From positions 62,001 to 126,000 of the IMG/VR virus record IMGVR_UViG_3300033153_015063: a DNA stretch of 64,000 bases; one strand, 5' to 3'. The translations under genes and the position numbers were made by a program. The notes under the pieces were generated by a model. It searched no databases. It saw only the letters and a program-made list of their open reading frames with translations, and was not told the DNA's origin. Below, piece after piece: positions 1,426-46,824 of this stretch (positions are counted from its first letter, which is position 1; every line of letters begins with the position of its first letter).

Positions 1426-2079
1426 TTACTCGAATGAGTTTGCGACGTAGCCTGCCAGGGCACCCAGCAATCCAGCTACGATGGCTGCATTGATAGTCAC
1501 CTCGTAGATTAAAGGTGGCCAGTAGATGATTATCAATATTGGAAATATAACCGTAAAGGCCATGAGTGGCCTACCGACATCGACACCAAGTCGAACCATG
1601 AAGAATAGTAGAAAAACTCCGAAAACCAACGAAAGGAAAGCGACCTCTGTTCTTTCGACCTCGATTGGGGCGAGGTAGACAAACAGGAGTGCCAATGCAA
1701 TTGTGAAGATGAATGGATATACTTTCAGGTCTTTTCCCGGGCCCCCATCTTTTATTTTCAGTTGCTCGTAGTGAAAAAGAAGGAAACCACCTATCCCGAA
1801 GTACATACCAACTGAACCGCAGAACAACACCAGATTGCCCTCCATCCCCTGTGATACCCAGTACCAGAAAGGCAGCACGATGAACGTCGTCATGGTCCCA
1901 AGTCTCCATGGCCCACCCCACGTCTCAAGTGTGCCATAGACAACTACCGCCGCCAACATACCTATGACCACACACAGCATGTTGATTTGCCTGGTGAAGG
2001 GGAACACCATGAGTGCTATTGCTACACCGATGACGACCACGAGATAGTGCATCTCCTCGTTTTTGTCCACTAAACTCAA
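1426..2079 (-). CDS. polytopic membrane protein
   Basis: about 8 hydrophobic segments; overlaps the upstream stop codon. Confidence 0.75.
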   Translation of the reverse strand: MSLVDKNEEMHYLVVVIGVAIALMVFPFTRQINMLCVVIGMLAAVVVYGTLETWGGPWRLGTMTTFIVLPFWYWVSQGMEGNLVLFCGSVGMYFGIGGFLLFHYEQLKIKDGGPGKDLKVYPFIFTIALALLFVYLAPIEVERTEVAFLSLVFGVFLLFFMVRLGVDVGRPLMAFTVIFPILIIIYWPPLIYEVTINAAIVAGLLGALAGYVANSFE

Positions 2080-2279
2080 CTCCTTTGGCGTCTATAGACA
2101 TACAGTCCATAAAAAAGTATCGCTAGCCCGACGCCAAGGGCTGCGTAGGGGTTGATGGTATCGAGGTAATCACGGATAGGGTCTGCGATGAGTTCAATGC
2201 CGAACGAGATAAGGATACCGACCAGGATGGCTGTAGTGACCCATTTCCTCGAAGAACTATCTCCGCCTAACTGTTCCAT
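2076..2279 (-). CDS. small 2-TM membrane protein
   Basis: two hydrophobic helices and a basic tail; part of an operon. Confidence 0.7.
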   Translation of the reverse strand: MEQLGGDSSSRKWVTTAILVGILISFGIELIADPIRDYLDTINPYAALGVGLAILFYGLYVYRRQRS

Positions 2280-2854
2280 ATCTTCCGCCTCATCCTGTTC
2301 TCATGGAAATCTCCGCCGATTCCCCTGCCGATTTCCATAAACTCCGGCCGGCCCTCATCGTCTATGTCACTTGGGGCACGTTCCACGATGATACCACGCT
2401 TCCCCTCGACAGAAGTTTCTTCCATAGGATGCATCGAATCGTATTGAGACACGCTTTGTTTCAGGTCGTCAAAATCCTCTTCGTCAGATGACATAATAAT
2501 CAAACAGTCCTCGTCGCCTTTCCTGACAACAGCGAGTTCATAGTCATCATCACGGTGAACTTCAATAACCTCTCCTTCATCTTCCAGGTCGCCGGTATCA
2601 TGGCCCATCGCCCTCATCATCTTTGCCATCATCAGGGCCTGAAATGCCTGTTCTGACTCTGGTGTAACCTGAGTGTCGGACTGGGGTTCTCCGGGACCTC
2701 TGGTCTCTTCCACTATGGCATCAGGAGGGCCCTTCCATCTATCCTTATTGTAGATAGTCCCATCTTCGTTGACCCGGCCGAGGTACTTGTCGGCTCCTTT
2801 CTCGGGGTCGTACATATAGGCGTACCAACTGTCTTTAACGGGTTGTTTCCACAT
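2267..2854 (-). CDS. acidic protein with a divergent leader-like N-terminus
   Basis: SWYAYMYDPEKGADKYLGRV resembles the Y-x-Y...Y-x-G hairpin of the leader family. Confidence 0.7.
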   Translation of the reverse strand: MWKQPVKDSWYAYMYDPEKGADKYLGRVNEDGTIYNKDRWKGPPDAIVEETRGPGEPQSDTQVTPESEQAFQALMMAKMMRAMGHDTGDLEDEGEVIEVHRDDDYELAVVRKGDEDCLIIMSSDEEDFDDLKQSVSQYDSMHPMEETSVEGKRGIIVERAPSDIDDEGRPEFMEIGRGIGGDFHENRMRRKIWNS

Positions 2855-3656
2855 TGGATGAGCCTCCTCTCATTATAACCGGGTCTACCAGGACATTCAG
2901 TGTCCTGGGCCTGATAGATGTATTATGGGTATTGGATTTAAGATTTACCCCTCTTTCTGCCATTTCATTTTCCACAACAAGTGCTTCATGCTCATCCTCT
3001 ACTACAATCTGAACGTCACCACTATGGTCGATAAGGACGGGACGGTCACAACGTACAAGGAAATGATAGATGGTAGCTTCGGTTCTGATAGAATCCTTCA
3101 ATGCACGACCTTCGGCTCCATACTTGGTCATCACGTTCTCGATATCCTCACTTGGGACGCTTCTTGCTGTTGCCAGGTTTATCGTTGCACGTTCAGGAAA
3201 ATCCAGGTTGAGAAGTGGTGCCTCCTGACCATCCCCATCATATTTCAATAAAGTGCCCAACTCGGTCTGGGACTCGGAGACCCCTGGCGGGTTTCTGAAA
3301 TTGACCTGCCCATCTGAGATGTAGATATCTTTGAACTCACGGATCATATCTGGATAGGAACCGAGGATCACCTTTGAAGAGAGATGAGTACTGTCATCGA
3401 GACCTGATGCAATCTGGCCGTCGCTCAGACCATCGGACTTGAATCTCCTGACCGTTGCATCTGTCACCAGAGCTTCGTTCACAATCGGAACCTGTTCTTT
3501 TTCAAAAATTGACATCATCCACTTCTCGAACTCGACTTCCTTTACGTAGTCATTCCATCTACCAAGATACTCTGTGTCCCCATCCCGCTTCCTGTAAGCA
3601 TAATAATTCCCTGAACCTTTTGGGATCTCATTTTTTGAAGCGGGATATTCAGACAT
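2835..3656 (-). CDS. protein with a divergent leader module
   Basis: N-terminal EIPKGSGNYYAYRKRDGDTEYLGRW. Confidence 0.8.
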   Translation of the reverse strand: MSEYPASKNEIPKGSGNYYAYRKRDGDTEYLGRWNDYVKEVEFEKWMMSIFEKEQVPIVNEALVTDATVRRFKSDGLSDGQIASGLDDSTHLSSKVILGSYPDMIREFKDIYISDGQVNFRNPPGVSESQTELGTLLKYDGDGQEAPLLNLDFPERATINLATARSVPSEDIENVMTKYGAEGRALKDSIRTEATIYHFLVRCDRPVLIDHSGDVQIVVEDEHEALVVENEMAERGVNLKSNTHNTSIRPRTLNVLVDPVIMRGGSSNVETTR

Positions 3657-3672
3657 CTATATCACTTACATC

Positions 3673-4704
3673 CTAGTTGTTTAAAAATGATTGGATAAAA
3701 TATAACCCTGCACCCCACATTACCGCAATGGAAACAAATTTGATTACGGGATGTTCTACATGTCGTGGGAAGAATATATACAGGAAACCAAAGAAGGTAA
3801 GATACATCGCCAGACCGACATAGATAAAATCTACATCCTCTTTGCTATTATCCTCATCAGCATCTGCCAGTTTAAGGTACCCTTCGGCACTCGGAATTAT
3901 ATCTGAACCAACTCCTATCTCAATCTCATCAAACATTATCTGGTCATTGAGTTCAAAGCCTATCGAGTTATCATTATCGAACTCAAACCTGGGGTCAGAC
4001 AGTAACTCGACAACCATAGCCAGTCCTGTTGCCACAGGTATTTGTTCTCCATCAACATCCCATCCCTCCAGTGGTTGGAGAACCAACGTGAAGGGTTCTG
4101 CGGGATTCATCGTATGGACAGTCCAGGCAAATCCCATCCAACGTTCTGTTCCATCACCCCTGACCCAGTCCTCTTCCTCACCATAACAGAAAAGGCCCAC
4201 ATTTTTTGCCTCTACAGACACACTCCTGATATGAAACAGGTCTATGGCTATCCCACGCCCACCATCGTTACAAGACCCCGAAAAAGCAAAGGAAAGTAAC
4301 ATAAAATCGTCGGGGCTGTCCAACCCACGTGAACCTACATCAATTTCATCGGGTGATAGATAGAGACCGAAGAACATGGTCTCTGGGACCTCGGTTGGTA
4401 GGTCGTTGGTGATAGCACCTGGCTCATCCCCATGCCACGTCAAGCGATACATGAAGTGGCCATGTTCCACCTGGTTGATGGTCAACCCTGTCCTGGCTAT
4501 CCCCCCGATTGTCACTACCTCTGAGCCAATTGCACCATCACCACCGAAACCATTTGTAGATGGTTCAGTGGTCTCGTTGACCTCGATGATACTACCATCA
4601 TTCACATCCCACTTCTCAACGTCGTCAAGGACCTCGGCACCAGCACCTGTGAGTATAGAAATGAAAAGTAATAATAACATTATGAAAGATATCTTATTGC
4701 ACAC
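3673..4704 (-). CDS. secreted, C-terminally anchored surface protein; paralog of 4959-6236
   Basis: GTG 4704 overlaps the upstream TAG; signal peptide; HGHFMYRLTW motif; two C-terminal TM helices. Confidence 0.75.
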   Translation of the reverse strand: MCNKISFIMLLLLFISILTGAGAEVLDDVEKWDVNDGSIIEVNETTEPSTNGFGGDGAIGSEVVTIGGIARTGLTINQVEHGHFMYRLTWHGDEPGAITNDLPTEVPETMFFGLYLSPDEIDVGSRGLDSPDDFMLLSFAFSGSCNDGGRGIAIDLFHIRSVSVEAKNVGLFCYGEEEDWVRGDGTERWMGFAWTVHTMNPAEPFTLVLQPLEGWDVDGEQIPVATGLAMVVELLSDPRFEFDNDNSIGFELNDQIMFDEIEIGVGSDIIPSAEGYLKLADADEDNSKEDVDFIYVGLAMYLTFFGFLYIFFPRHVEHPVIKFVSIAVMWGAGLYFIQSFLNN

Positions 4705-4949
4705 TATTTCCCACTTCCAAGTGTCCTCTCGATGAAAATAACTATGAACACGACAGAGATTGTCAATACGACCAGATAGGCAAATTGGCCGAGTGGGGAA
4801 TCCGAGAACACAGGGAGGTAGGTATGGAACCACTCAGAGATAACGGCCCTGTATTCGAGAGCAAGGAAAAAACCGAGAGCTACAATGACGAGTTGGACCA
4901 ATCTTTCTCTGATAGCAGATGCCAGATTGGAGAAGAACTCAAACACCAA
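4704..4949 (-). CDS. small 2-TM protein, possibly DUF5654-like
   Basis: two TM helices; family resemblance judged by eye only. Confidence 0.65.
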   Translation of the reverse strand: MVFEFFSNLASAIRERLVQLVIVALGFFLALEYRAVISEWFHTYLPVFSDSPLGQFAYLVVLTISVVFIVIFIERTLGSGK

Positions 4950-4958
4950 CTCAACACC

Positions 4959-6236
4959 TCACAACACGACGTAGACCAACACGAATATGGCTACAGCAGC
5001 TCCGGCCAACATGGCCCATTTCACAAATTTGTTCTCAAGCAGCGTAGGACTCACTACAGACAGAACTCCGATGGTCACCATAACGGCACTACTCAATACG
5101 ATTAAGAACGTGTCGAAAGTGCCAATTTCATCTACCACTTCTTTTTCATCTTTGTCAGATGCTTCGAGCTCCGCCAGAACCTCGTTGACTCGTTCTTCGG
5201 CATAGGCGGAGGTGTAGACGTCGTGGGCCCGGTCAAATGGTTCATCATCATCCCCATCTCCCAGGACTACGTTATCGAAGATGACCTCGGAAGTTGTTTC
5301 AAAGCCAACAGCATTGCCTTCATCGGGGAATATTATGTTAGCGTCGATGAGTAACGTCTTTGTGACAGTAGTCACCGGGACCATGACGTTGGATGCAAAG
5401 CTCAGGAATTTACCCTGGAGATACTGGATTTCAACAGCAGTTTGACTCTCTGAGCCTGTGGGTGGAGTTATGTTCCAGGCAAACCCAAGCCATTTCTCTT
5501 CGGTGGTCCCTGCATAAAACCAGTTGTCCTGGTAATGGTCGTCGGTCCCTACGCAGAGTATGTCAAGGCGGTTGAAAGTGACAAACGACCCATCTACCAC
5601 GTAGTAAAACTCCAGGTAAACCTGCCATCCACAGGCCTTTGAATACATCTCATTCGATGGATGCATGGTGTAATCCAGATTGTTGACGAAAGTCATCGTC
5701 ATAACCAGGAAAGTTGGGTCACCAGCCCCGGTCAAAACACCAAACTCTCCCACTTCGGCGTCACGGTCTGGCATCCAGTAGACGGCAAAGAAGGTTTTCT
5801 CCTTGAATGCAGTCGAGATAGTCCGAAGGTCGTTCTGCACCTCGTCAGGCTGACCACCTTCCATAATATCCCAGGTATGTCGGTACATGAACCGACCATG
5901 AAGAACCTCGTCCTTGTTCAGGTCGTTCTTGGCGACACCTGTCATCTCGATTGGCTCAGACGTTGGGGTGGTCCCAAATGCCGATCCATCATCGAGAAAA
6001 CCATCGGTTGCCAGATGGCTGGGTTCTGTTTCATCTGTCATCAGAAGCACGTCGTCGTTGATATCCCAGAAATCCAGATCCTGGCTGTAGATTGTCCCAC
6101 GACCAGGTGCAAGCTCCTGGTCCAACTTGGTCAGTTTCGACCAGTCCACGGCCATGGCTGGGGTGGAGAGAAGGAACAATCCCACCACCATGACAACCAG
6201 GACCATCGTTGATTTGTTTTTCATCTCTGTCACCAC
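4959..6236 (-). CDS. secreted, C-terminally anchored surface protein
   Basis: signal peptide ending PAMA; HGRFMYRHTW motif; two C-terminal TM helices. Confidence 0.8.
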   Translation of the reverse strand: MVTEMKNKSTMVLVVMVVGLFLLSTPAMAVDWSKLTKLDQELAPGRGTIYSQDLDFWDINDDVLLMTDETEPSHLATDGFLDDGSAFGTTPTSEPIEMTGVAKNDLNKDEVLHGRFMYRHTWDIMEGGQPDEVQNDLRTISTAFKEKTFFAVYWMPDRDAEVGEFGVLTGAGDPTFLVMTMTFVNNLDYTMHPSNEMYSKACGWQVYLEFYYVVDGSFVTFNRLDILCVGTDDHYQDNWFYAGTTEEKWLGFAWNITPPTGSESQTAVEIQYLQGKFLSFASNVMVPVTTVTKTLLIDANIIFPDEGNAVGFETTSEVIFDNVVLGDGDDDEPFDRAHDVYTSAYAEERVNEVLAELEASDKDEKEVVDEIGTFDTFLIVLSSAVMVTIGVLSVVSPTLLENKFVKWAMLAGAAVAIFVLVYVVL

Positions 6237-8602
6237 CCATAGGCAGTCTGTCCAAAGCTCACATCACTTACAGGGTCAAAGACGCCCAACGCAGCAAATA
6301 CGAATAGCACCACTCCAAGGATTATTGGTATGAGTGCGATGTCGGAACCCTGGGAGTCACTCTTTGATACGAAGTACTGGAGACCAACTCCAACGAGTAG
6401 GAACATCAGTGCTATTGAAGTCCAGATGTGTTGGAGTATGAGGCCGAGGAATACCCCAAGTGCTATGATAACCCCACCTATGACAATGACACCAATGGTG
6501 AACAAATTGCCGGTCTCAGAAGTTTCCTCGATGTCGGTTTTACTCCTTATCAGGAATCCACCGAACACCACCCCAGCACCAGCTACTATGAAGTAGGCCT
6601 GGGTTCTACCCAGGCCCTCTGGCACGAAAGCCCTGATGACACCAAGTACGATGACGGCGACGACGCCTACCAATGCGGCCAGGCGGGCCCACTCATCTGT
6701 AGCCTTTGGTAGTTGAACGGGTAATACAAAGTAGATTACAATACCAGCGATGATACCAGCAATGAGTAGCCAATAGGTGTCAAAGAACGTTGATATGGTG
6801 CTGCGGGCTGTGACCACCTCGCCACCTTTGAAGCCCTCGAATATCTGCATGGAGAGTGCCCGGCCCGTGATTGTGTAGTCGCCTTCGCCAGTCGCCTCGA
6901 TGGTGAATTTTTTCGAATATTTGTTGTGGGTCCCATCATCATAGACATCCTCGTACACATCGGTCTCGACACTATCTTTCAACTCTACAGCACCTTCTAC
7001 CTCGTAGCTGAGAGAGATGCTTTCGTGATGCCCGATAACGGTGTAAGTGACAGTGATTTCTTTGGTGACATCCTGGACCATCTCAGATGGTGCAGAGATA
7101 ACAACGAGAATATCAGGGGCCTCCCGCTTGATGAAATACGACTTTGAATTTTTACCACCACCATCGTCATACACACTTATGCCGATACGTACCTCTGGTT
7201 CTGATTGGCAGGTCAGGGTTGCGGTCGCCTCACTACCAGACACACTCTGGGTGATTGCGGCCTGTTCATCACATATCAACTCTATTCTGGTCAAACTCTT
7301 TCCAGTATCGGGTTTAGCGGTGATGTCAAACCCTGAGTTGGTCCCTTCATTCGTGATAAGTGTGCCAAGAGTACCAACCAATATCGGTCTGTCCTGAAAG
7401 TAAGGCGGATGGTCCCACTCTATTGCCGTGATTGTGGGTTCAGAACCACTGGCCGATAGAACGGCCAGAGTTAATGTCTCGGTGACGGTCTGTACACCTG
7501 GTTCCGATGCCGTGATAGTCAAAGTGAGACTACCAGCCGAGGTTGGTAACCAATTGAACGTGAGTTTGTATATCTGCGTTCCAAGTGTTGCAACAGCCTT
7601 CAGATTGCTGATGGAAGAACCAAGACTGTCAGATGCAGACCAGTACGCCGAACAAGTTCCGTCACAGCTCATGTCGGTACTCAGAGAGTTGTGGAAGTTG
7701 ACCTCGACAGACCTGGTATTACCAGAGAACACGTCATAGTCCGTCCCAGGTTTCTGGCCGCTTGCCCACGAGAAGGTACCAACGTCAGAGGTCCGATGAA
7801 TTATAAGGTCATCTACCCAGGAATTTCCGAATCTGTAGTTTGTGTAGTGTTCTAGACCATACTTACTCATCTCGATTCCAATCTGCTTGATAGTGAAGCT
7901 ATGTGAGATTGTAGCGAGTCTCCGTCCGTTCAAGTCTACGCTGAAGGTTCCACTTGAGACCAATACCTGGATATGGTTCCAGTCACCAGCCACATTACCG
8001 CTACCATCTACGTTACCATTACCCCATTTCAGGGTGGTTTGAATACCCTGTATAACTTTTGTCTCAACTACATTATTATTTGTGTGGCTTCTGACAAAAA
8101 GATTAGAAGTTCCAAGATGACGGTAGAATCTAATACTTATCCCATCTTCGGGACTAGTGATACCAAAATTTGAAGGGCCAAGACCTTGCCTCAATTGATG
8201 TTCTTCAAAATAAACCCCAAACGTGTTGTCATGTACCTGACTCTGCCAGAGAAAGTATCCATCGAAGATAAATTCATCAGTGGCAGAAGCGGTGTTATAG
8301 TCAAAAACAGCGTCCACAATACCACCACATTCGATTGCGTTTTTGCCACTAAGACCAACACAAGGACTTGTGACAATGGCAATGTTATCGGTTCCACGAG
8401 ATGCCAGAGACGTAGTTCTCTCGATATAAGGGCCATACCCCTGAGAATCCGATTTGAAATCACCGTCGGTAGATACCCAGACCGTTGCTATTTCAGGGTT
8501 GCTGACCTGTCCATAGATGTTACAAAAACCCACCATGATGATGAGTATAACAACCATTCCAGCAATGTAGACTGGTTTTGTCAATTTACTCATATTATTC
8601 AC
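6230..8602 (-). CDS. surface protein with lectin/LamG-like and Ig-like regions and about 6 C-terminal TM helices
   Basis: N-terminal anchor; GDWNHIQV...VDLNG pattern; Ser/Thr-rich beta segments. Confidence 0.75.
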   Translation of the reverse strand: MNNMSKLTKPVYIAGMVVILIIMVGFCNIYGQVSNPEIATVWVSTDGDFKSDSQGYGPYIERTTSLASRGTDNIAIVTSPCVGLSGKNAIECGGIVDAVFDYNTASATDEFIFDGYFLWQSQVHDNTFGVYFEEHQLRQGLGPSNFGITSPEDGISIRFYRHLGTSNLFVRSHTNNNVVETKVIQGIQTTLKWGNGNVDGSGNVAGDWNHIQVLVSSGTFSVDLNGRRLATISHSFTIKQIGIEMSKYGLEHYTNYRFGNSWVDDLIIHRTSDVGTFSWASGQKPGTDYDVFSGNTRSVEVNFHNSLSTDMSCDGTCSAYWSASDSLGSSISNLKAVATLGTQIYKLTFNWLPTSAGSLTLTITASEPGVQTVTETLTLAVLSASGSEPTITAIEWDHPPYFQDRPILVGTLGTLITNEGTNSGFDITAKPDTGKSLTRIELICDEQAAITQSVSGSEATATLTCQSEPEVRIGISVYDDGGGKNSKSYFIKREAPDILVVISAPSEMVQDVTKEITVTYTVIGHHESISLSYEVEGAVELKDSVETDVYEDVYDDGTHNKYSKKFTIEATGEGDYTITGRALSMQIFEGFKGGEVVTARSTISTFFDTYWLLIAGIIAGIVIYFVLPVQLPKATDEWARLAALVGVVAVIVLGVIRAFVPEGLGRTQAYFIVAGAGVVFGGFLIRSKTDIEETSETGNLFTIGVIVIGGVIIALGVFLGLILQHIWTSIALMFLLVGVGLQYFVSKSDSQGSDIALIPIILGVVLFVFAALGVFDPVSDVSFGQTAYGW

Positions 8603-10743
8603 ACCCCCAACCTGATAGGAACAAAATAAGTATCTATCAATATAAATCCGACGATGATACCAGCCACCACTACCACCGTATATATGGTGAATCCTGCAAA
8701 CTGTTCTGGATACAGTTTAAGCAACCCGAAGAGTGTAATAGCAGCGATGATAACTCCTATCAGAACAGGGCCAAGGAATATCTCTGAAAGTGTTGTGGCA
8801 GCCCGATCCTCCTTCTCGGTTTTGATGACGAGTGCCAGGGTCTCAGTATCAGTGTTGCCGCTTTCGTCCTCGACAGAGAGAGATACCACGTAGTCTCCAG
8901 TGCCAAATTGGTGAGTGACTACCTCTCCATAGGAAAGATTGGTCCCGTCTCCGAAATCCCACTCATAGAGCTCAATGTTGTCCTCGGCGTCTATGGAGAG
9001 TGACGAGAAGGTAATTGTGCTGCCCACGATAGCAGTATAGCTTCGTCTTGGTTCGTCGGACGGAGTTATACTGGTGGTAATACCTATTTTTGCACTCGGT
9101 TCAGTGTCGATGAACTCGATAAAGATAGGTTGTGTAGTGTCGGTGATGTCGAACTCATCTCGGACGAAGAGAGTCACTCTGTATTCCCCGTAATGGGGAG
9201 CTCGGAAATCAAATACTGCTTCGGATGACGTCACGATGTTGCTGTCCTCATCAGTAAGAATCCATGCATATTCGAGTATGTTGTTATCTGCTGGGTCGCT
9301 GTCGCCATCATTATCGGAAGTGGAAAGAGACCCGTCCAGCTCCACAGGACCCAGACCATTGATGGGCGTGGTAACCTGTTTTATAACCGCTGTAGGACCA
9401 CCATCAACCACGACAATAGGGCGACTTCCCAGGCCAACGGTTTGGGTGTTGCTAACCTGCCCAGAATCGTCAGTTACCTCAGCGGTAGGATTAAAGTTCC
9501 TAGTCGATGTATAGATGTGGTGATAGATGTGGGGGATACCTTGAGACTGAGCAACGAGCTCATAATCATCCCAGACACCATCTCCCTCCCAATCCCACTT
9601 GATCGACACTACGTCCTGTATAATAGTGGCACCACTGATACCAGATGTCTCTCCATCTATAAAGATTGCCGAGAACACTATAGTATCATCCTTCAGAACG
9701 TATGTGATACCGATGTTTGTCGAGGTCACTGACGATGTTATAGAGAAATACACCGCAGGAGGTTTATTGATGTTGGGAGTATGCATTGGGGCAATATCTA
9801 TGGCCTGGTCACCACAACCTCCAGTCGAGATAATATAAGTTGTGTCTATAAAACCATCACCATTGGTATCAGAACCCTCGATTTCAGTCAGTCCATTCTT
9901 ACTCCAGTAATTACCCATCGGGGCTTCAAGGATAGTTATTATCTCGCCATCATCCTCTACATCTATGTCATCGACGACGCTGAAGGTCACTGTTCCCCAG
10001 CCAACACCACCGGATACTTCCTGGACATTGTTAATGAATCTATTATAAAAGAAGTTGAGATTTGTAGTTCCAGATGGATGAAAATCTCCAAGAGAAACAG
10101 CCTTGTTGCATCCTTCAATAGTATTATCCACGAAGTTGATGTCATTGGTACTTTCATCGAGTGAAATACACGATGATGATGCAGACGAGGACCCCATGAT
10201 TTCATTACTCATCACTGTAATAATAGTGTCGTCACCATAATCAGTGTATCTTATTTCGATGTTCTTTTCGCATTCGTAGAGAACGCTGTCACCAATATAG
10301 ACTTCGGTCTCGGCACCACCTTCGATTTTGATGCAGGTGGTTTGCTGGCTGATATCTGCATCGGTAATGGAACCCTTCGCACCTGCATTGAAGAGGATTC
10401 CGTCACCCCAATCTGATTGGTCAACACCAGGCACACCGGTGTCCTCGGCCCCGAAGGTTGCCCCACTACGGACTATCAACTCTCCGTTGACCTCGATATG
10501 GGCACCCTGCGAGATTACGACATGTGAACCCACAATCTCAAGGGACCCATCTATCATAAGGTCTGAAGAGACCAGGTAGACGTTGCCCTCCTCCCAGGTC
10601 CTATCATCTGTGATACTTGCCGGGGCCACGATAGTGGTGGTCTTGTAGACGTCGGTGGGGTCAGTGAGGTAGAAGGCTGCACCTACAAGGATTAAAGCCA
10701 TGATGAACATCAGCATCTTATTATTATCTGCCATTAAAGACAC
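8599..10743 (-). CDS. surface protein with NosD-like beta-helix and PKD domains
   Basis: GNYWS...DTNGDGFID, WDWEGDG and YEWDFGDG motifs; N-terminal anchor and two C-terminal TM helices. Confidence 0.8.
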   Translation of the reverse strand: MSLMADNNKMLMFIMALILVGAAFYLTDPTDVYKTTTIVAPASITDDRTWEEGNVYLVSSDLMIDGSLEIVGSHVVISQGAHIEVNGELIVRSGATFGAEDTGVPGVDQSDWGDGILFNAGAKGSITDADISQQTTCIKIEGGAETEVYIGDSVLYECEKNIEIRYTDYGDDTIITVMSNEIMGSSSASSSCISLDESTNDINFVDNTIEGCNKAVSLGDFHPSGTTNLNFFYNRFINNVQEVSGGVGWGTVTFSVVDDIDVEDDGEIITILEAPMGNYWSKNGLTEIEGSDTNGDGFIDTTYIISTGGCGDQAIDIAPMHTPNINKPPAVYFSITSSVTSTNIGITYVLKDDTIVFSAIFIDGETSGISGATIIQDVVSIKWDWEGDGVWDDYELVAQSQGIPHIYHHIYTSTRNFNPTAEVTDDSGQVSNTQTVGLGSRPIVVVDGGPTAVIKQVTTPINGLGPVELDGSLSTSDNDGDSDPADNNILEYAWILTDEDSNIVTSSEAVFDFRAPHYGEYRVTLFVRDEFDITDTTQPIFIEFIDTEPSAKIGITTSITPSDEPRRSYTAIVGSTITFSSLSIDAEDNIELYEWDFGDGTNLSYGEVVTHQFGTGDYVVSLSVEDESGNTDTETLALVIKTEKEDRAATTLSEIFLGPVLIGVIIAAITLFGLLKLYPEQFAGFTIYTVVVVAGIIVGFILIDTYFVPIRLGV

Positions 10744-10772
10744 CTTTTTTGTTGGGGGTCCGTTCTACGAGA

Positions 10773-10872
10773 GGGCAAAAGAGGGTTTCGAACCCTCACC
10801 TTCATCGGACCATATCGCCCCGGTAAAGGGGCCATGACCCTGATGATGTGCTTCCACTTACACTACATTGCC
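10773..10872 (-). ncRNA. tRNA-like RNA (100 nt) with an extended anticodon arm
   Basis: acceptor GGCAATG/TTTTGCC; D arm GTGT/GCAC with GG loop; stem TCATC/GATGA enclosing a 35-nt hairpin; T arm GAGGG-TTCGAAA-CCCTC. Confidence 0.7.
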
Positions 10873-10924
10873 AGTACAAAAGAGGGTTGGAAAAGAGGGT
10901 TGGAAGGGGGTGGAGGATTCGATC

Positions 10925-13900
10925 TCAGAACTCCATGTACTGACCGATGTCCCACGTCAGGTCGAACCAGAAGCTATGGATGAGAATGAACATCACCACC
11001 CACAGAAGATACACACCGATCAGTTTGAAGGACAGATCATAGACACCACCGAAACCAAGGGTGTCACCAAGGAATAACAGAGTCAGGATGGTGGCGATGA
11101 AGGCCAACAGGAACCACATGAACCATCCCTCGAAGATGAGTTCGTTATGGTCCTTGTCAACCTTTTCATCACTGACGACTGCGGTCACGTTCTGCACCTG
11201 GACCACCGTTACATGGGTCTTCTGGACGAGTATCTCAACGCTATCGGTGACGTCGGGGTCTGTATCACTCAAGCTGTCGGTAACATCTACGATAAGCGTA
11301 CAGGTCAGGTTGTCGATCTCGTCGTCGAGTGTGGGTGCTGTGTAGGTCCCCCATGCATCTGTGTCGAGGGCCTGCGAGACGCCGCCACAGTCGATAGTGC
11401 TGTTTTCTCCCTCGACGCTGAAGTCGTAGTAGAGGGTGTCTCCGTTGGCGTCGGTGGCCTGCACCATGAACTTCCCGGTTTCCTCAGGGGCAATAACCTC
11501 GTCGAAGGCAATGAACCTGATGATAATAGGTTCATACTCGGTCGTCCCTCCATCAGGCTGCACAATGATACAGTCGTCACAGACTGTGGTAGCGTCCTCA
11601 ACGATGTCAGTGCCAGCCGCTGAATGGTCTGTGGTGGTATGGTCCACCACAGTATCATCTACTTGTCCATCAGCACCATCGCTGTATCCGACAAGGTTGT
11701 TGTTATCCTTCAGAGACCATGTAGCATCAGTGACACCAAGACCGAAGTTCTCGTTGTTCTGGTTCTTGATATCCTCCTCGACTGTGTTGGAAGGTGCCGC
11801 CAGAACCTGGGTCTGGACCCCGAACTTGTCGTTGTTCTCGGCGTGGTTGTTCCAGATAGAGATGTCGTAGTCATCCACTACCAGTCCGAGGCTGGAGTAG
11901 ATAACCATCATAAACGCAGACCCACAGGACGAGTCAGCCAACCCGATGAGCTTGGTTCCCACAGGGGCACATGCTGCGGGGAGTGGTTCGGTCATATCTA
12001 TGACCTCATAGTTACTCATCTTGATGACATACTCATCGTTCATGTCCTCGGTCAACCAGAGATTCACCGAGTTACCTTCACCGCCACTCTGGGAAACGTT
12101 CTCGGAAAGAAGTGGTGCATTGAAGTTGACGATTCCGCTATCTACCTCGTTGAGAACGTTGTTGCTGAACATCGTAACATCAAACCCACAGTCAACTGGA
12201 GTAGGAAGCAATGGGCTACATGTCGTACTCTCGATGTTGAACAGGGCATTGCTTCGATGTGAGAAGTCGGTGTTGTTCACAGAGTAAGAGACTGTGTTGG
12301 GTCTGGTGGAAGGATTCCCGGTCATCAGTGCAACTGTGGATAGGGTCCCCCCAATATCGTCATTACCAGGAACTCCTGCCATGTTCATCAGGAACGGCAT
12401 ACCGTTATCTCCGGTCAATGGACCGATGACGCTGCCACCGTTGATTTCGAGGCTACCGAAGTTCCAGATGCCCATACCACCACCCTGGAAGGTGACCTTA
12501 CCGTGTGTCTGGTCACCGATGGCCTTGATAGTCCCATAGTTCTGGATAGTAACCACATCATCCACGTTATCGTGTTGGACAGTGGCACCACTCTCGATGT
12601 AAAGAGTATGTCCAGCGGGCACATAAACCCCCTGTGGACTGGGCGTCAATGGGTTGGTGTCAACGTAGTTGTCGAGGTCTCCAGTGTTGTCAGAATCGAC
12701 CACAGCAACAGTATCACCGTCGTAAGGATTGACCCACACAGCTCCCTCGTCCCGTTCCCAGATGAACACCCCGTACCACGGATGGTCCTGTTCTGGATGA
12801 CAGAACCAGTTTGCACCACGATAGTGGTCATGGGCCCATGCATAGAACTCCACGTTGTCGGGGTCGATGACACCAGTATCGAATGATACTTCCCAGAGGT
12901 TCGGGGTGTCGACGTTCTCGGCCATGTCCTCAACGTGCCATCCCTCGTCATACCGCTTCATCACCATGTCGACATAGGTAGGTACATCCACAAGCCAGTC
13001 ATGGACGGCGAAAGATGGATAGACCATCTTGAATGGTGGCATGACAGAGAGAGATGCACCATACTCGAACTGGAACCAGAAGCTATCTTCGTCAACGTCA
13101 TACCAGGTCCGGTCGATCAACGAGAGGTCGGTTCCAGAGAAGGGGATGGCCGCTTCGAACGAGCGAACATCGTTATCATGGTTACAAAGGTCGATGGTGC
13201 TGGCTGGCCCATAGTCTGTGAAACCAACTGCGAACTCGATGGTAGTGATGTCCTGATAAGGAGAACCACCGAGACCGCTTCCGACTGTATAGGTCAGGTA
13301 TTCATCATACACCCCGTCCATGTCGTAGTCAGAGTAGAGAGAGATGGTCTCGGTTCCATCGTCGATGTCGTTGCACATCACTCCGCCGAGATAGAGAAAC
13401 TCTGTGGACATATCAGCATAGGCGTAGAGATAGGTGTTGTCCTCAGTGTAGTAAGATGTCGGGGCATAGACACTATCCCAACCACCTTCCCGCTGCTTGA
13501 AGGTCTGGAGGTTCATCCAGTCCTCGGTAGTATCGAGCTCGCCATCGACTGTTGGAATGTCGAAAGAGTATGCTGGATGGATGCCACTGGTGGTGGCTGG
13601 GCTATCGGTCCAGGGGACCTGCCAGATATACGGATTATCCTCGGAAAGCTCATCGTAGGGCACGGCAACCAGGCGATCCTCATAACGATCTCGCCGCATC
13701 GAGGTCTCTGCGTTACCAAAGAGGGAAGGGACATTGATGGCCCCGGTCTCCTCGACACTATCATCGGTTTGATCCCTCCAGAAGAGTTTTATCTCCTTAA
13801 TCTGTTCATCATCTTCATCGTAGACCACGAAACTGGTGTCTACGATGGTTGTCTCCTCGACATAGGTATAGGAGTATTCCAGCATCCGGGGTAGGCCCTG

Positions 13901-15397
13901 GATTCCCACATCATCCCATGCGGGACCCTCGATCTTCGGGTTGACACGGGGGTCAGCTCCACCAGCAACCTGTTCGGCGAGATAAGGACGCTCAGCGGTC
14001 TCAATCTTACCAGCAGTACCAGTGGTGGCATCAGACCCGAAGTAGGTCACCATGTTCCCCTTGACGAAGTTCTCCTCAGGCTGAAGATTGTAGATGCTAC
14101 ACCGGTAGAGTCCGCCACTCGGTTCCTGCAAGTAGAACTGAAGATTCCACCATGCCTCGAAACCGTTGTCCTGGAGGTTGTTATGGAAAAGTATCGTGGA
14201 CATCTGACCGGCGACCCAGTCGAAGGGCTGTGGGATGAAGATATACCCAAAGCCCCAGTAATTAGTCGCAAGGTCATAGACCAACTGCCCATCCAACTTG
14301 ATGTCAACAACCCCGAAATCTCCGTTGTCGGAAATCTCGTTGTAACGGATGTTCGGGGAAGAATCAAAGATGTAAATTCCTGTGCAGATTCTTGGTGGGA
14401 AAGGGAATGGAATCTGCACCACGACATCTTCGGAAATACCCTCGATACCGTCCAGCCACCCGTCACCATCAGTGTCTACGTCGATGTCCGGGTCTGGATC
14501 TCTGATGAGGTCAAACCATGGGCTGACCTCGTCCATATTCCCGGTTATCTCATTGAGTTCGATGAGAGGAGAAGCTGGTCCATAGTGGTAGTACTCAGGG
14601 ATCTCTGGTTCTGGTTGGTAGGATGCCTCAGGGAATACATCAGCAGGCACCTCGTAGACACCACACATGAGATGGAAAGCGGGTATCGACGGTGCATTCA
14701 TGGCCAGACCAACCAGGATACCCGCACCGTTACCATGAATCCGAGAGTTGGAGATAGTAACGGTAGGGTGGTCCCTATCCATCGAACGACCACAGACCGA
14801 GATGCCTATATATGCATCAGTGACGTCGGCATGGTCTATGTGAACGATACGGTCAGAAAAGCCACCCATCCAACCTGGGTAGTGTTGGGCTGGAAGGATA
14901 TGGATTCCACCCCACAGTTCCTCCCAGTAGGGCGGATCGTCCACAAGAGAGTTCTGGTTCGTGAATCTGACCATACCCTCGTCATAGGTCCCACGCACGA
15001 TGATGGACCCATAGACGTAGATACCCACGTTGTAGGTTGTCCATGGGCTGGGGTCATCATAGTCACCGGGGATGTCATTGGGGCCATCAGGGTCCAACCA
15101 GTAATTGGCGTGTCCGCCACCACCGAGGGCACGGACCTCTACACCGGCCTCTATGACCAATGTCTTTTCTGGCGGGATGATGAGGTCCCCGTTCAGGAAG
15201 TATTCCCCTCTCTCCCAGTGTTCGTCAGAAGAAAGGATGTATGGAACACCAGCAGTCGATACATAGGTGACTTCCGTCTCTCCATCTTCGACAGAGGTTG
15301 AAAATCCAAGCTTCGGAGCGTTTACCCAGAGAACGGCCACAAGCAGGAACACTCCCACTACGGCCAGCGGTCTCTTGAGGTCCTCAAACATTACCAT
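10925..15397 (-). CDS. large acidic surface protein with beta-helix repeats and two C-terminal TM helices
   Basis: 1490-aa ORF; LVIEAGVEV, WGGI and SSPNIRYNEISDN patterns. Confidence 0.85.
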   Translation of the reverse strand: MVMFEDLKRPLAVVGVFLLVAVLWVNAPKLGFSTSVEDGETEVTYVSTAGVPYILSSDEHWERGEYFLNGDLIIPPEKTLVIEAGVEVRALGGGGHANYWLDPDGPNDIPGDYDDPSPWTTYNVGIYVYGSIIVRGTYDEGMVRFTNQNSLVDDPPYWEELWGGIHILPAQHYPGWMGGFSDRIVHIDHADVTDAYIGISVCGRSMDRDHPTVTISNSRIHGNGAGILVGLAMNAPSIPAFHLMCGVYEVPADVFPEASYQPEPEIPEYYHYGPASPLIELNEITGNMDEVSPWFDLIRDPDPDIDVDTDGDGWLDGIEGISEDVVVQIPFPFPPRICTGIYIFDSSPNIRYNEISDNGDFGVVDIKLDGQLVYDLATNYWGFGYIFIPQPFDWVAGQMSTILFHNNLQDNGFEAWWNLQFYLQEPSGGLYRCSIYNLQPEENFVKGNMVTYFGSDATTGTAGKIETAERPYLAEQVAGGADPRVNPKIEGPAWDDVGIQGLPRMLEYSYTYVEETTIVDTSFVVYDEDDEQIKEIKLFWRDQTDDSVEETGAINVPSLFGNAETSMRRDRYEDRLVAVPYDELSEDNPYIWQVPWTDSPATTSGIHPAYSFDIPTVDGELDTTEDWMNLQTFKQREGGWDSVYAPTSYYTEDNTYLYAYADMSTEFLYLGGVMCNDIDDGTETISLYSDYDMDGVYDEYLTYTVGSGLGGSPYQDITTIEFAVGFTDYGPASTIDLCNHDNDVRSFEAAIPFSGTDLSLIDRTWYDVDEDSFWFQFEYGASLSVMPPFKMVYPSFAVHDWLVDVPTYVDMVMKRYDEGWHVEDMAENVDTPNLWEVSFDTGVIDPDNVEFYAWAHDHYRGANWFCHPEQDHPWYGVFIWERDEGAVWVNPYDGDTVAVVDSDNTGDLDNYVDTNPLTPSPQGVYVPAGHTLYIESGATVQHDNVDDVVTIQNYGTIKAIGDQTHGKVTFQGGGMGIWNFGSLEINGGSVIGPLTGDNGMPFLMNMAGVPGNDDIGGTLSTVALMTGNPSTRPNTVSYSVNNTDFSHRSNALFNIESTTCSPLLPTPVDCGFDVTMFSNNVLNEVDSGIVNFNAPLLSENVSQSGGEGNSVNLWLTEDMNDEYVIKMSNYEVIDMTEPLPAACAPVGTKLIGLADSSCGSAFMMVIYSSLGLVVDDYDISIWNNHAENNDKFGVQTQVLAAPSNTVEEDIKNQNNENFGLGVTDATWSLKDNNNLVGYSDGADGQVDDTVVDHTTTDHSAAGTDIVEDATTVCDDCIIVQPDGGTTEYEPIIIRFIAFDEVIAPEETGKFMVQATDANGDTLYYDFSVEGENSTIDCGGVSQALDTDAWGTYTAPTLDDEIDNLTCTLIVDVTDSLSDTDPDVTDSVEILVQKTHVTVVQVQNVTAVVSDEKVDKDHNELIFEGWFMWFLLAFIATILTLLFLGDTLGFGGVYDLSFKLIGVYLLWVVMFILIHSFWFDLTWDIGQYMEF

Positions 15398-23699: not shown

Positions 23700-23762
23700 C
23701 CTTTAGCCAGAAAACAAACCCTCCCGAACTCTTTATATACTCAACACCCATTGTATTCCTTG

Positions 23763-24452
23763 ATGACCACCGTAGAGATACCTGAGGGTTCAGGGAATAG
23801 ATACCGCTATGATTATGAAGAGGGAGCTACGGTCTACAAGGGGCCGGTCGGCAATGCACCAGCCCTGGATGAGGAGGAATTTCTCTCTTTGATGGAAATG
23901 GGCATTCCCGAAGGGAGGATAGCCACCGAAAGAGATGGGATATACCGGAAAATCAAGGGTAACTACTACGACGACGACGGAAACCGCATCAAGGTATTCG
24001 TAAAGTACGGTTTCACCCAGTTGGGCAACCAGGAACCATACTTCTCCATCACAGCCGAGGCAGGGTCCAACAAAACCGGTTGGTCCAGTGGGATGCAGCA
24101 TGAAAAAATCGAGAACGCTTTCGAGGAGTTCCCAGAGCTCACCAGGTGGCATCTTACAAACATCAGTAATGGTCCGATGCACTATAATGCCAACGCCAAA
24201 CACCATTGGAAAAAAGATAAGCTTGACGCCTTCAAGAGTACCATCGTGTTCGGGGCCCTACCAGACGATGATATGGAAGACATCGAGTTTATGATGGACC
24301 AGTCTCCCGACGCCTTCCTTAACGATAGACTGCCAAAGTTGATGGAACAGTTTCGAAAGGACATGAAAAAGTTCAATGTTCCACCACCAAGAGGACAGAG
24401 AACACGAGAAGCTATCGACGTTGTGATGGCAGCAGCCTACGAAGACTGGTAA
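23763..24452 (+). CDS. leader-module protein with phage-type hypothetical cargo
   Basis: MTTVEIPEGSGNRYRYDYEEGATVYKGPVG; TTTATATA at 23732; leaderless start. Confidence 0.85.
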   Translation: MTTVEIPEGSGNRYRYDYEEGATVYKGPVGNAPALDEEEFLSLMEMGIPEGRIATERDGIYRKIKGNYYDDDGNRIKVFVKYGFTQLGNQEPYFSITAEAGSNKTGWSSGMQHEKIENAFEEFPELTRWHLTNISNGPMHYNANAKHHWKKDKLDAFKSTIVFGALPDDDMEDIEFMMDQSPDAFLNDRLPKLMEQFRKDMKKFNVPPPRGQRTREAIDVVMAAAYEDW

Positions 24453-34081: not shown

Positions 34082-34195
34082 CAAGGAATACAATGGGTGT
34101 TGAGTATATAAAGAGTTCGGGAAGATTCTGCATCTCAAATCGGCCGGTGCTGCTTCTCAAAAGAGTCCTACCCAACTTACCCAGCTACCTCCTTT

Positions 34196-36255: not shown

Positions 36256-36416
36256 CGGCTATGGATGAGCTGAGGAGTATTTAAAAGGTTCTCTTTTGAA
36301 GGGATTTACATCCTGTTCAATCTCAAACTATAGGGATGTACATCAAAACTATATAGATACTTACACTTATTTCACATAAAATAAGTTAAAAAGTGATTTA
36401 CTTTTATATCTTGCCT

Positions 36417-43641: not shown

Positions 43642-43702
43642 TACAGACACCTAGGATGATTATGGATGAGCTGAGGAGTATATAAATGTCCCGTTAACTT
43701 AT

Positions 43703-44402: not shown

Positions 44403-44612
44403 TTATTTCTTATCTGGAGAATGAGATACATTCTCCCTGAACAACCATTCTCCATCCCAACCAAAATCGACCCAGTAATCATCACATCCTTCACAGTAGT
44501 AGATGTATTCACCTACGTTATCACCGATTGGTTTTCCCTCTTCGTTAACTGGATGCCAGTGACAACAAGTACACAGACCACAACCACCAGGGCACCCCTC
44601 ACTATCACTCAT
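44403..44612 (-). CDS. small Cys-rich protein
   Basis: ATGA coupling to the leader gene; 7 Cys. Confidence 0.6.
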   Translation of the reverse strand: MSDSEGCPGGCGLCTCCHWHPVNEEGKPIGDNVGEYIYYCEGCDDYWVDFGWDGEWLFRENVSHSPDKK

Positions 44613-46688: not shown

Positions 46689-46824
46689 CAAGGAATAGAA
46701 GGGGTGGTGGGTATAAAAATGTGATGGTGGGGTGTGGTGGGTGCCCCGGTTCCTTCATTTCTATCTTCCATTTTCCATCACTACTCAATTTTTTCATTTA
46801 ACTTACAACTAATTATATGAATGG

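What the first reader, a model, noticed from the sequence alone, without database searches (positions are those of the whole stretch)
2267..3656. Divergent leader modules inside the membrane-protein operon
Seen: two adjacent soluble proteins with EIPKGSGNYYAY...YLGR and WYAY...YLGR lie within the long minus-strand surface-protein cluster. Inference: ancestral or structural members that link the module to particle or envelope assembly, supporting the address-tag idea.
Basis: inference. Interest (0 to 1): 0.6.

Follow-up and report, generated by a model that had tools for sequence, protein, structure and literature searches.

The report
Two degenerate copies of viral tag
Two soluble proteins inside a membrane-protein operon of a 243-kb archaeal-type viral element carry worn-down versions of a small N-terminal domain that about 40 other genes of the same element wear as a common tag; the family is new and its purpose is untested.

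Summary
ORFs 2835-3656(-) (273 aa) and 2267-2854(-) (195 aa) are real, adjacent, soluble, acidic genes inside a ten-gene minus-strand operon of membrane and surface proteins.

The window is part of a circular 242,596-bp IMG/VR record with archaeal-type promoters. About 40 of its genes begin with one conserved ~45-residue module, MTTVEIPPGSGNRYRYEYEEGxTVYKGPVGxAPELSEEEFL. It is predicted to form three strands plus a helix and sits in front of unrelated C-termini, including Ham1 and RelA/SpoT enzyme domains.

An HMM built without the two proteins scores the 273-aa protein at E = 3.9e-9 over the whole module. The 195-aa protein matches only the strand-2/3 hairpin: E = 0.01 against all ORFs and 4e-4 among N-termini.

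Both lack the family's GPVGxAP linker and its private TATA/leaderless promoter. Their start regions instead carry Shine-Dalgarno-like sequences, as expected for genes inside an operon.

Nothing shows that they are ancestral or tied to particle assembly. Both are orphans, no capsid or terminase gene was recognised, and no relative carries the operon. The "address tag" idea gains support from the enzyme fusions, not from these two genes.

The module matches no Pfam, PHROG, NCBIfam, PADLOC or PDB family significantly.

The parts
2835..3656 (-). 273-aa soluble acidic protein, a divergent member of the N-terminal module family
   Evidence: ORF and JGI gene call. Typical codon usage. Profile E = 3.9e-9. 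Orphan in the 5.8-billion-protein search.
3498..3638 (-). Module of the 273-aa protein (residues 7-53): strands 7-10, 18-24 and 27-33, helix 34-53
   Evidence: AlphaFold2 with the module alignment, pLDDT 84-94 over residues 11-50. Alignment to the family keeps E-I-P-x-G-S-G-N, Y-x-Y, G-x-T-x-Y-x-G and E-x-E-F but lacks GPVGxAP.
3661..3666 (-). Partial Shine-Dalgarno-like AGTGAT, 4 nt before the ATG of the 273-aa gene. Only 16 nt separate this gene from the stop of the upstream 386/343-aa gene.
   Evidence: Sequence read directly. No TATA box of the family's type in this position.
2267..2854 (-). 195-aa soluble acidic protein whose N-terminus keeps only the strand-2/strand-3 hairpin of the module
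   Evidence: ORF and JGI gene call. Codon usage. Orphan. Atlas model poor, pLDDT 0.55.
2765..2827 (-). Hairpin remnant WYAYMYDPEKGADKYLGRVNE (residues 10-30) of the 195-aa protein
   Evidence: Profile positions 14-32. E = 0.01 against all ORFs and 4e-4 among N-termini. 0 of 5000 shuffles reach its score. Resembles family variants such as YRYAYDPETQATRYLGPVG.
2863..2869 (-). Shine-Dalgarno GAGGAGG, 8 nt before the ATG of the 195-aa gene, inside the end of the 273-aa gene (the two genes overlap by 20 nt)
   Evidence: Sequence read directly.
2076..2279 (-). 67-aa single-span membrane protein; its start overlaps the end of the 195-aa gene
1426..2079 (-). 217-aa protein with about seven membrane spans; its start overlaps the stop of the 67-aa gene
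3673..6236 (-). Two paralogous acidic proteins with a signal sequence and two C-terminal spans (386/343 aa and 425 aa, 28% identity), with an 81-aa two-span protein between them
   Evidence: No relatives outside this genome.
6230..15397 (-). Upstream part of the operon: 790-aa, 714-aa (PKD domains) and 1490-aa acidic proteins, each with an N-terminal signal sequence and C-terminal spans

Best explanation
The two ORFs are real genes. They are degenerate paralogues of a lineage-specific family defined by a small N-terminal domain of three antiparallel strands followed by a helix. In about 40 genes of this circular 243-kb archaeal-type element, that domain is placed in front of unrelated soluble proteins.

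Shown:
- The 273-aa protein keeps the whole module apart from the GPVGxAP linker.
- The 195-aa protein keeps only the second and third strands.
- Both have lost, or never had, the family's private TATA/leaderless promoter. They are instead internal genes of a membrane-protein operon, with Shine-Dalgarno-like sequences and overlapping gene ends.
- The canonical module is under purifying selection at the protein level.
- The canonical module is also found fused to ordinary enzymes.

Inferred:
- The module is a shared docking handle, that is an address or assembly tag, that brings many different cargo proteins to one common partner.
- The two operon copies are cytoplasmic accessory proteins, made in step with the membrane proteins.
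- They use what is left of the handle, chiefly the tyrosine-rich hairpin, for a changed or weakened contact of the same kind.

What the address is (a particle, a membrane site, a replication compartment or a host machine) is not known.
For: Family and its size:
- jackhmmer and profile searches in the element's own genome.
- 286 cluster representatives at E <= 0.001 among 1.84 billion proteins, nearly all with the module at the extreme N-terminus.
- 69 module genes on 49 short contigs of three JGI metagenomes, 20 of them with two or more copies.

Fold:
- Module alone has pLDDT 86, with strands 2-5, 13-19 and 22-29 and helix 37-51.
- The 273-aa protein shows the same elements.

Selection: pS 0.62 against pN 0.155 among 24 copies from this genome, and synonymous codons vary at invariant residues.

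Tag-like use:
- C-termini are unrelated to one another and have no membrane spans.
- Some are Ham1 (starting at residue 48), RelA_SpoT, DUF5661, AAA_5, methyltransferase or DUF6876 domains.

Promoter: a TATA box at -28 to -42 from the ATG occurs in 20 of 35 module genes against 5 of 299 other ORFs. The same layout is seen in relatives.

The two genes themselves: profile scores, alignment, operon position, Shine-Dalgarno sites and overlaps, and codon usage.
Against: - No partner is known and no binding was shown. The co-fold of the two proteins gave no answer.
- The 195-aa match covers only about 20 residues and fails against a profile of this genome's copies alone (E = 1.9).
- Both proteins are orphans, so their conservation, and therefore their function, cannot be checked.
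- The C-terminal parts fold poorly in prediction.
- Operon membership is inferred from spacing only; no transcript data could be found.
- The two genes may simply be decaying copies.
Confidence: 0.45

Rival explanations
1. Decay without function. The 273-aa gene is a worn-out family copy that landed in the operon by chance. The 195-aa resemblance is chance or the last trace of another dead copy. Neither has anything to do with the membrane proteins or with any address.
For: - Both lack the linker and the family's promoter.
- Both are orphans.
- The genome holds other decayed copies: truncated ones and two with the ATG deleted.
- The 195-aa match is weak.
- Large parts of both predicted models have low confidence.
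Against: - Both frames are intact at 273 and 195 codons, with codon usage typical of this genome's genes.
- Both have a Shine-Dalgarno-like sequence at the right distance, and their ends overlap neighbouring genes as in coupled genes.
- The 273-aa module still folds with pLDDT above 84.
- The 195-aa hairpin sits at the same distance from the N-terminus as in the family.
Confidence: 0.2
2. Particle loading. The module is a capsid- or virion-targeting domain, like the T4 capsid targeting sequence. It loads dozens of cargo proteins into the particle for delivery to the next host. The two operon copies are virion- or envelope-associated members.
For: - The module has an N-terminal position, a constant tag and variable cargo, including enzymes useful on entry.
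- Precedent: ten N-terminal residues of T4 IPIII suffice to load foreign proteins into the head and are cut off by the prohead protease (PMC9026906).
- Giant phages pack about 50 head proteins (abstracts).
- A near-invariant L/I-x-E lies inside the module; the match to the T4 cleavage motif is my own reading, not a test.
Against: - No capsid, terminase or prohead-protease family was recognised (and the precomputed Pfam hits).
- The module is a folded 45-residue domain, not a short propeptide.
- Nothing is known about cleavage.
- The record may be a plasmid-like element rather than a virus.
Confidence: 0.15
3. Nucleic-acid tether. The module is an AP2- or integrase-arm-like DNA-binding domain, and the address is DNA. 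The 273-aa copy, which is less acidic and has an R-K-R patch, would bind DNA near or for the operon.
For: - Three strands plus a helix is the AP2/arm-type layout.
- Such domains recur among the nearest neighbours in five libraries: Arm-DNA-bind_5 in one of 33 modules at E = 0.027; top Atlas neighbour, TM 0.44; AP2 entry 3igm at Z 2.5-2.8; arm-type integrase and AP2 rows in Foldseek PDB and BFVD at E of 0.7-3.
- An Arg in the second strand is nearly invariant.
Against: - Every one of these matches is at noise level.
- No PDB profile hit to any AP2 or arm domain at E <= 10.
- Canonical modules are acidic (mean net charge -3.6 over 45 residues).
- The conserved Arg is Ala in the 273-aa protein.
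Confidence: 0.12
4. Expression cassette only. Promoter, start codon and the first 45 codons spread together as a portable unit that gives captured genes strong leaderless expression. The peptide itself does nothing.
For: Promoter and module are duplicated together, and the promoter type is nearly private to module genes.
Against: - Synonymous sites are close to saturated while the peptide is conserved (pN/pS about 0.26).
- The peptide is conserved across metagenomes, with 14 invariant columns.
- It folds confidently.
- The two operon copies keep the peptide without the promoter.
Confidence: 0.05

Closest known systems
Capsid targeting sequence of phage T4 internal proteins (IPI-IPIII, Alt), and the ejection-protein sets of giant phages such as SPN3US
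   Same: A constant N-terminal element sits in front of unrelated proteins of one large virus and is thought to give them a common destination. Cargo can be enzymes (PMC9026906; abstracts).
   Different: The T4 element is about 10 residues and unfolded, and is removed by a known prohead protease in a known HK97-type head. Here the element is a folded domain of about 45 residues. No protease, capsid or cleavage is known. About 40 genes carry it, each mostly with its own promoter.
AP2 / integrase arm-type DNA-binding domains (Pfam Arm-DNA-bind families; PDB 3igm, 3jtz, 3rmp, 7et4)
   Same: A three-stranded antiparallel sheet followed by a helix, often at the N-terminus of phage proteins. These are the most frequent named neighbours in the structure searches.
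   Different: No significant sequence or structure score. The module is acidic, and its loop P-x-G-S-G-N and linker G-P-V-G-x-A-P have no counterpart that I could show.
Multigene effector families with a constant N-terminal trafficking domain and variable C-termini (polymorphic toxins, PE/PPE, LXG)
   Same: The same architecture logic: a conserved N-terminal domain defines the route and diversified C-termini define the action (PMC3482391, listed).
   Different: Those are bacterial secretion substrates with known secretion machines and immunity genes. Here the host is archaeal-type, no secretion machine is recognised, and some C-termini are housekeeping-type enzymes.
N-terminal strand-loop-strand of family I inorganic pyrophosphatases
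   Same: Sequence motif E-I-P-x-G-S-x-N-K-Y-E-x-D...G. For example 2prd reads VIEVPRGSGNKYEYDPDLG against the module's VEIPPGSGNRYRYEYEEG. Profile E = 0.0023 with this genome's copies and 0.027 with the broad family.
   Different: Only about 19 residues match. The catalytic Lys and Glu positions are not kept. Pfam Pyrophosphatase finds nothing in the genome. No pyrophosphatase appears among the structural neighbours.

Membership tests
N-terminal module family of this element (unnamed): 273-aa protein | Module at the extreme N-terminus | tested here: met
   Match begins at residue 9 of 273; family members begin at residues 1-5.
N-terminal module family of this element (unnamed): 273-aa protein | E-I-P-x-G-S-G-N loop, Y-x-Y-x-Y strand, G-x-T-x-Y-x-G strand and E-x-E-F helix | tested here: met
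   NEIPKGSGNYYAYRKRDGDTEYLGR...VKEVEFEKW. Only the third Tyr is replaced, by Arg. Profile E = 3.9e-9 over positions 5-46.
N-terminal module family of this element (unnamed): 273-aa protein | G-P-V-G-x-A-P-x-L linker between strand 3 and the helix | tested here: not met
   Replaced by RWNDY; the helix follows the strand directly.
N-terminal module family of this element (unnamed): 273-aa protein | Three strands plus helix in prediction | tested here: met
   E7-10, E18-24, E27-33 and H34-53 at pLDDT 84-94, against E2-5, E13-19, E22-29 and H37-51 for the canonical module. The alignment used for the fold contained family modules, which favours this result.
N-terminal module family of this element (unnamed): 273-aa protein | Own BRE/TATA promoter about 30 nt before the ATG (leaderless layout) | tested here: not met
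   16-nt gap to the upstream gene, with a partial Shine-Dalgarno sequence instead.
N-terminal module family of this element (unnamed): 195-aa protein | Significant profile match at the N-terminus | tested here: inconclusive
   Positions 14-32 only. E = 0.01 (all ORFs) and 4e-4 (N-termini), with 0 of 5000 shuffles as high. But E = 1.9 with a profile of this genome's copies alone and 0.05 with a short-loop subfamily profile.
N-terminal module family of this element (unnamed): 195-aa protein | E-I-P-x-G-S-G-N loop, G-P-V-G-x-A-P linker, E-x-E-F helix and own promoter | tested here: not met
   None of the four is present.
T4-type capsid targeting sequence | Loading into a prohead and removal by a prohead protease at L/I-x-E | not testable with these tools
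   No capsid, terminase or protease family was recognised. No proteomic data.
AP2 / integrase arm-type DNA-binding domain | Significant profile or structural match | tested here: not met
   Best results: Pfam E = 0.027 in 1 of 33 modules; VIA Z 2.8 (rmsd 5.3 A, 53 aligned); Foldseek E >= 0.7.
AP2 / integrase arm-type DNA-binding domain | Basic DNA-contact surface | tested here: inconclusive
   Mean net charge -3.6, range -7 to +2. One near-invariant Arg in strand 2.
Family I inorganic pyrophosphatase | Full catalytic domain (Pfam PF00719) | tested here: not met
   No hit in the genome at E <= 10. Only 19 residues of motif similarity.

The most novel reading that the evidence does not exclude
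The module is the recognition handle of a so far unknown sorting system of a very large archaeal virus or virus-like element, and about 40 different cargo proteins carry it. The two operon-embedded proteins would then be the system's cytoplasmic adaptors or chaperones rather than cargo. They would keep a hairpin that pairs with the cargo's hairpin and hand the cargo to the membrane proteins encoded beside them, for export, envelope incorporation or particle loading. The nearest shapes found are noise-level and serve only as leads: type III secretion chaperone-like folds for the 195-aa protein and a GspL/PulL-like ferredoxin domain for the 273-aa C-terminus.
Probability: 0.1. Interest if true: 0.85.

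Novelty: new variant of a known kind. Interest (0 to 1): 0.55.

Why it matters
Large viruses of bacteria are known to sort proteins into particles or compartments by short tags. For archaeal viruses nothing comparable is described in what I could find.

Here roughly one gene in eight of a 243-kb element carries the same folded N-terminal domain. It has its own promoter type and is even placed in front of ordinary enzymes. That points to a sorting or assembly code that could be tested directly: use the module as bait, fuse it to a reporter, or look for it in particle proteomes.

The two genes of this finding matter mainly as natural variants. They show which parts of the module can be lost (linker, loop, promoter) while the tyrosine-rich hairpin is kept. 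They are also the only family members tied by position to membrane proteins. On present evidence they do not reveal the address.

Tried and rejected
**Family libraries**
- Pfam, PHROGs, NCBIfam and PADLOC scans of both proteins and their neighbours gave nothing above noise.

**Protein searches**
- The word-indexed search of 5.8 billion proteins was used three times, because the family scans left the proteins open.
- The 273-aa protein, the 195-aa protein and the 386/425-aa paralogue profile each found only themselves.
- That search sees only proteins 0.55-1.75 times the query length and needs shared 5-residue words. It is therefore not proof of absence.

**IMG/VR and GTDB scans**
- IMG/VR scans with the 273-aa protein, two module alignments, the 425-aa protein and the 217-aa protein confirmed no relative.
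- GTDB species genomes gave none either.
- Synteny in relatives could therefore not be tested.

**Structure searches**
- The 273-aa model was searched against PDB by Foldseek, by VIA wide search and against the Atlas. The module model was searched against PDB by Foldseek, VIA wide search and VIA second look, and against BFVD.
- There was no match at E <= 0.001 or Z >= 6.

**Co-fold**
- The co-fold of the 273-aa and 195-aa proteins returned the tool's verdict "no answer" (score 0.00, folded without alignments). It counts neither for nor against binding.

**Other checks**
- A pyrophosphatase origin was considered: no such gene is in the genome, and the motif similarity weakens with the broader profile.
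- A profile of the short-loop subfamily did not extend the 195-aa match to strand 1.
- The run index listed no sequencing run holding the stretch.
- Paper searches for the sample identifiers and for comparable archaeal-virus families found nothing relevant.
Full report
**What is there.** ORFs 2835-3656(-) (273 aa) and 2267-2854(-) (195 aa) exist as described and carry the quoted motifs near their N-termini. JGI's independent gene calls give the same two products. Their codon usage in the annotated frame is 0.29 and 0.40 bits per codon. That is typical of long genes of this genome (0.30 +/- 0.09), while shifted frames score about -0.48. Neither protein has a hydrophobic span, and both are acidic.

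The two genes overlap by 20 nt. The 195-aa gene has GAGGAGG 8 nt before its ATG. The 273-aa gene has AGTGAT 4 nt before its ATG and lies 16 nt after the stop of the upstream gene.

Upstream lie five large acidic proteins, each with an N-terminal signal-like segment and C-terminal spans. They are 1490, 714 (with PKD domains), 790, 425 and 386/343 aa; the last two are paralogues at 28% identity. An 81-aa two-span protein sits between those paralogues. Downstream lie a 67-aa single-span and a 217-aa seven-span protein, both with overlapping gene ends. Operon status is inferred from this spacing, not shown.

**The genome.** The window is bases 62001-126000 of a 242,596-bp IMG/VR record (JGI Ga0366824_1000500). 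The record has an exact 64-bp terminal repeat, which points to a circular assembly.

It encodes:
- a family B DNA polymerase, closest (about 30% identity) to those of haloarchaeal tailed viruses;
- a clamp loader, class II ribonucleotide reductase, both topoisomerase II subunits, topoisomerase IA, an SNF2 helicase, CobT-like proteins and a Ro60-like protein;
- several DNA methyltransferases and serine recombinases.

Most genes have no family hit. Terminase_6N, Terminase_6C, Phage_capsid and Capsid_NCLDV find nothing. No virion family appeared among the roughly 30 large proteins scanned, or in the precomputed Pfam hits for about 120 kb of the genome. So the record being a virus rests on IMG/VR's filing.

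**The module.** An iterative search seeded with the first 70 residues of the 273-aa protein shows the following.
- About 40 ORFs of this genome share a conserved N-terminal stretch, consensus MTxVEIPPGSGNRYRYEYExGxTVYKGPVGxAPELxExEFLExM. About sixteen of them lie in the window.
- The parts after the module are unrelated to one another (only two BLAST pairs among 37), and none has a membrane span.
- Among 24 indel-free copies, pS is 0.62 and pN is 0.155, and invariant Gly, Ser and Asn use several codons. The peptide is therefore what selection keeps, not the DNA.
- Most module genes have a BRE/TATA-like box, for example CCGAACTCTTTAAATAC, ending about 25 nt before the ATG. That is the layout of archaeal leaderless genes. 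A strict pattern finds it in 20 of 35 module genes but in only 5 of 299 other ORFs.
- A profile search of 1.84 billion cluster representatives finds 286 proteins at E <= 0.001, of which 138 are at E <= 1e-10. Of the 150 listed, 31 are from this genome and the rest are not. Nearly all have the module at the very N-terminus, followed by a unique sequence.
- In JGI metagenomes the relatives lie on 49 short contigs from three samples. Twenty of these contigs carry two to four module genes, mostly with the same TATA-to-ATG spacing.
- None was found in other IMG/VR records or in 185,579 species genomes.

**Fold and known families.** AlphaFold2 on 147 modules gives pLDDT 86, with strands at 2-5, 13-19 and 22-29 and a helix at 37-51.

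No library recognises the module:
- Pfam run on each of 33 modules gives only single hits at E >= 0.027, one of them Arm-DNA-bind_5.
- The VIA wide search finds six chains at Z >= 2; the best is Z 2.7, and an AP2 domain scores Z 2.5. The second look gives Z 2.8 for that same AP2 entry.
- Foldseek finds nothing below E = 0.5 in PDB or BFVD.

AP2, AP2-HNH and arm-type integrase entries keep turning up among these weak rows, and as the top Atlas neighbour at TM 0.44. I take this as a shared simple layout, not as membership. The module is acidic on average, with net charge -3.6.

The only cross-family sequence signal is a 19-residue resemblance to the first strand-loop-strand of family I inorganic pyrophosphatases. 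It scores E = 0.0023 with this genome's profile and 0.027 with the broad profile. The genome has no pyrophosphatase gene. I leave this as a curiosity.

**What the module is attached to.** Pfam on 150 family members finds AAA_5 (four members), DUF5661 (two), Ham1, RelA_SpoT, a methyltransferase, DUF6876 and a few others.

In this genome:
- Ham1 starts at residue 48, directly after the module (genome 165979-166656).
- RelA_SpoT occupies residues 126-228 of another member (genome 53294-54109).
- DUF5661 ends a third member (window 61010-61759).

A constant folded N-terminal piece in front of otherwise ordinary, unrelated proteins is what a docking or address handle looks like. It remains an inference, because no partner or location is known.

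**The two proteins against the module.** I built a profile from 149 family members without the two proteins and searched all 1363 ORFs of the genome.
- The 273-aa protein scores E = 3.9e-9 over profile positions 5-46.
- It keeps E-I-P-K-G-S-G-N, two of the three alternating Tyr, G-D-T-E-Y-L-G and V-K-E-V-E-F, but has RWNDY in place of GPVGxAPxL.
- Folded with the module alignment, its first 53 residues give the same three strands and helix at pLDDT 84-94. The rest is poorly predicted except residues 170-240, an alpha/beta unit whose best match (the GspL/XcpY periplasmic domain, Z 5.4) is within noise.
- The 195-aa protein matches only positions 14-32 (WYAYMYDPEKGADKYLGRVNE) at E = 0.01.
- Restricted to the first 45 residues of 334 non-overlapping ORFs, it scores 14.3 bits (E = 4e-4). 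The next non-family ORF scores 3.4 bits, and none of 5000 shuffles of its own N-terminus reaches 14.3 bits.
- It resembles family variants with a longer turn, such as YRYAYDPETQATRYLGPVG.
- It fails with a profile of this genome's copies only (E = 1.9). A short-loop subfamily profile does not extend the match (E = 0.05).

I rate homology at about 0.95 for the 273-aa protein and about 0.7 for the 195-aa protein. Both lack the family's promoter.

A second group of divergent modules lies at window 36954-38123 and 39081-39689, again in closely spaced genes.

**Ancestral or derived?** A quick maximum-likelihood tree on 54 columns puts 26 of 27 canonical copies from this genome in one clade nested among foreign copies. 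The 273-, 389- and 202-aa modules join outside, on branches of 8-10 changes per column. The 195-aa hairpin is placed elsewhere on an equally long branch. An early split and long-branch attraction give the same picture, so the tree decides nothing. Because the canonical sequence, including the linker, is shared across samples, the two proteins are more simply read as derived. This is an inference.

**Link to particle or envelope.** Position in the operon is the only link.
- Both proteins and the operon's 386/425-aa paralogues are orphans in the searches run.
- No related record carries the operon.
- The run index listed no sequencing run holding the stretch.
- The co-fold of the two proteins returned "no answer", which the tool says is no evidence either way.

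**Verdict.** The homology claim is supported strongly for one protein and tentatively for the other. The claims "ancestral" and "linking the module to particle or envelope assembly" are unsupported.

My preferred reading is that the two genes are degenerate family members kept as cytoplasmic accessory proteins of the membrane-protein operon. The module itself would be a shared docking handle with an unknown address.

Rivals, in order of weight:
1. Plain decay.
2. A capsid-targeting role of the T4 kind (facts on T4 from PMC9026906).
3. An AP2/arm-like nucleic-acid tether.
4. A pure expression cassette; the selection pattern argues against this one.

The module family as a whole is the more interesting object: it is new to the libraries searched, very abundant in one element and directly testable.

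Noticed in passing
whole genome; in the window: 23751-24452(+), 24549-25646(+), 33278-34138(-), 35344-36255(-), 42407-42949(-), 43144-43650(-), 44609-45112(-), 45652-46224(-), 46281-46691(-), 59862-60683(-), 61010-61759(+), 61808-62476(+): About 40 genes of the 243-kb element, roughly one in eight, start with the same ~45-residue module followed by unrelated soluble sequence. 286 further cluster representatives exist in public metagenomes.
   Followed up: yes
about 25-45 nt upstream of most module genes, e.g. window 36256-36300 and 60684-60730: A BRE/TATA-like box (e.g. CCGAACTCTTTAAATAC) at a fixed distance from the ATG is nearly private to module genes: 20 of 35 against 5 of 299 other ORFs. 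It is also seen in relatives. The layout suggests leaderless transcripts and one regulatory class.
   Followed up: partly
genome 165979-166656(-), 53294-54109(+); window 61010-61759(+): The module is fused directly to a Ham1 NTP pyrophosphatase domain, a RelA/SpoT-type domain and DUF5661. In relatives it is also fused to AAA_5 ATPases, a methyltransferase and DUF6876.
   Followed up: partly
window 36954-38123(+), 38120-39076(+), 39081-39689(+): A second tight gene cluster holds two more divergent modules, of 389 aa and 202 aa. They also lack the GPVGxAP linker and group with the 273-aa module on long branches.
   Followed up: partly
L019:734-1250(-) and L022:3771-4290(-) (genome 162734-163186 and 219771-220220): Two otherwise intact module genes have no ATG. 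A deletion between the TATA box and the coding start leaves CTG or CCG where the start codon should be. They may be dead copies or may use an unusual start.
   Followed up: partly
window 62494-62691(+) and 52135-52389(-); genome 23998-24627, 39126-39851, 51596-52075: Truncated or internal module fragments. In the list, the first 60 bases of the module at 62494 are identical to those of the copy at genome 51596-52075, which suggests a recent duplication.
   Followed up: no
genome ends (1-64 and 242533-242596): An exact 64-bp terminal repeat, as produced by assembly of a circle. One module gene runs across the junction.
   Followed up: partly
module residues 3-21 of canonical copies: Resemblance to the N-terminal E-I-P-x-G-S-x-N-K-Y-E motif of family I inorganic pyrophosphatases (E 0.0023 to 0.027). 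No pyrophosphatase gene in the genome.
   Followed up: partly
whole genome: No capsid or terminase family was recognised in a record filed as a complete virus. Replication and nucleotide-metabolism genes are plentiful, as are at least five DNA methyltransferases.
   Followed up: partly
window 47860-48678(-) and 49283-50233(+): Two serine recombinase genes (Resolvase; Resolvase plus Recombinase) sit among the module genes.
   Followed up: no
window 3673-4833(-) and 4959-6236(-): The two membrane-anchored acidic proteins next to the finding are paralogues (28% identity, E = 1e-26) with no relatives outside this genome. The longer ORF start of the first (GTG at 4833) is probably too far upstream; JGI aa.
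   Followed up: partly
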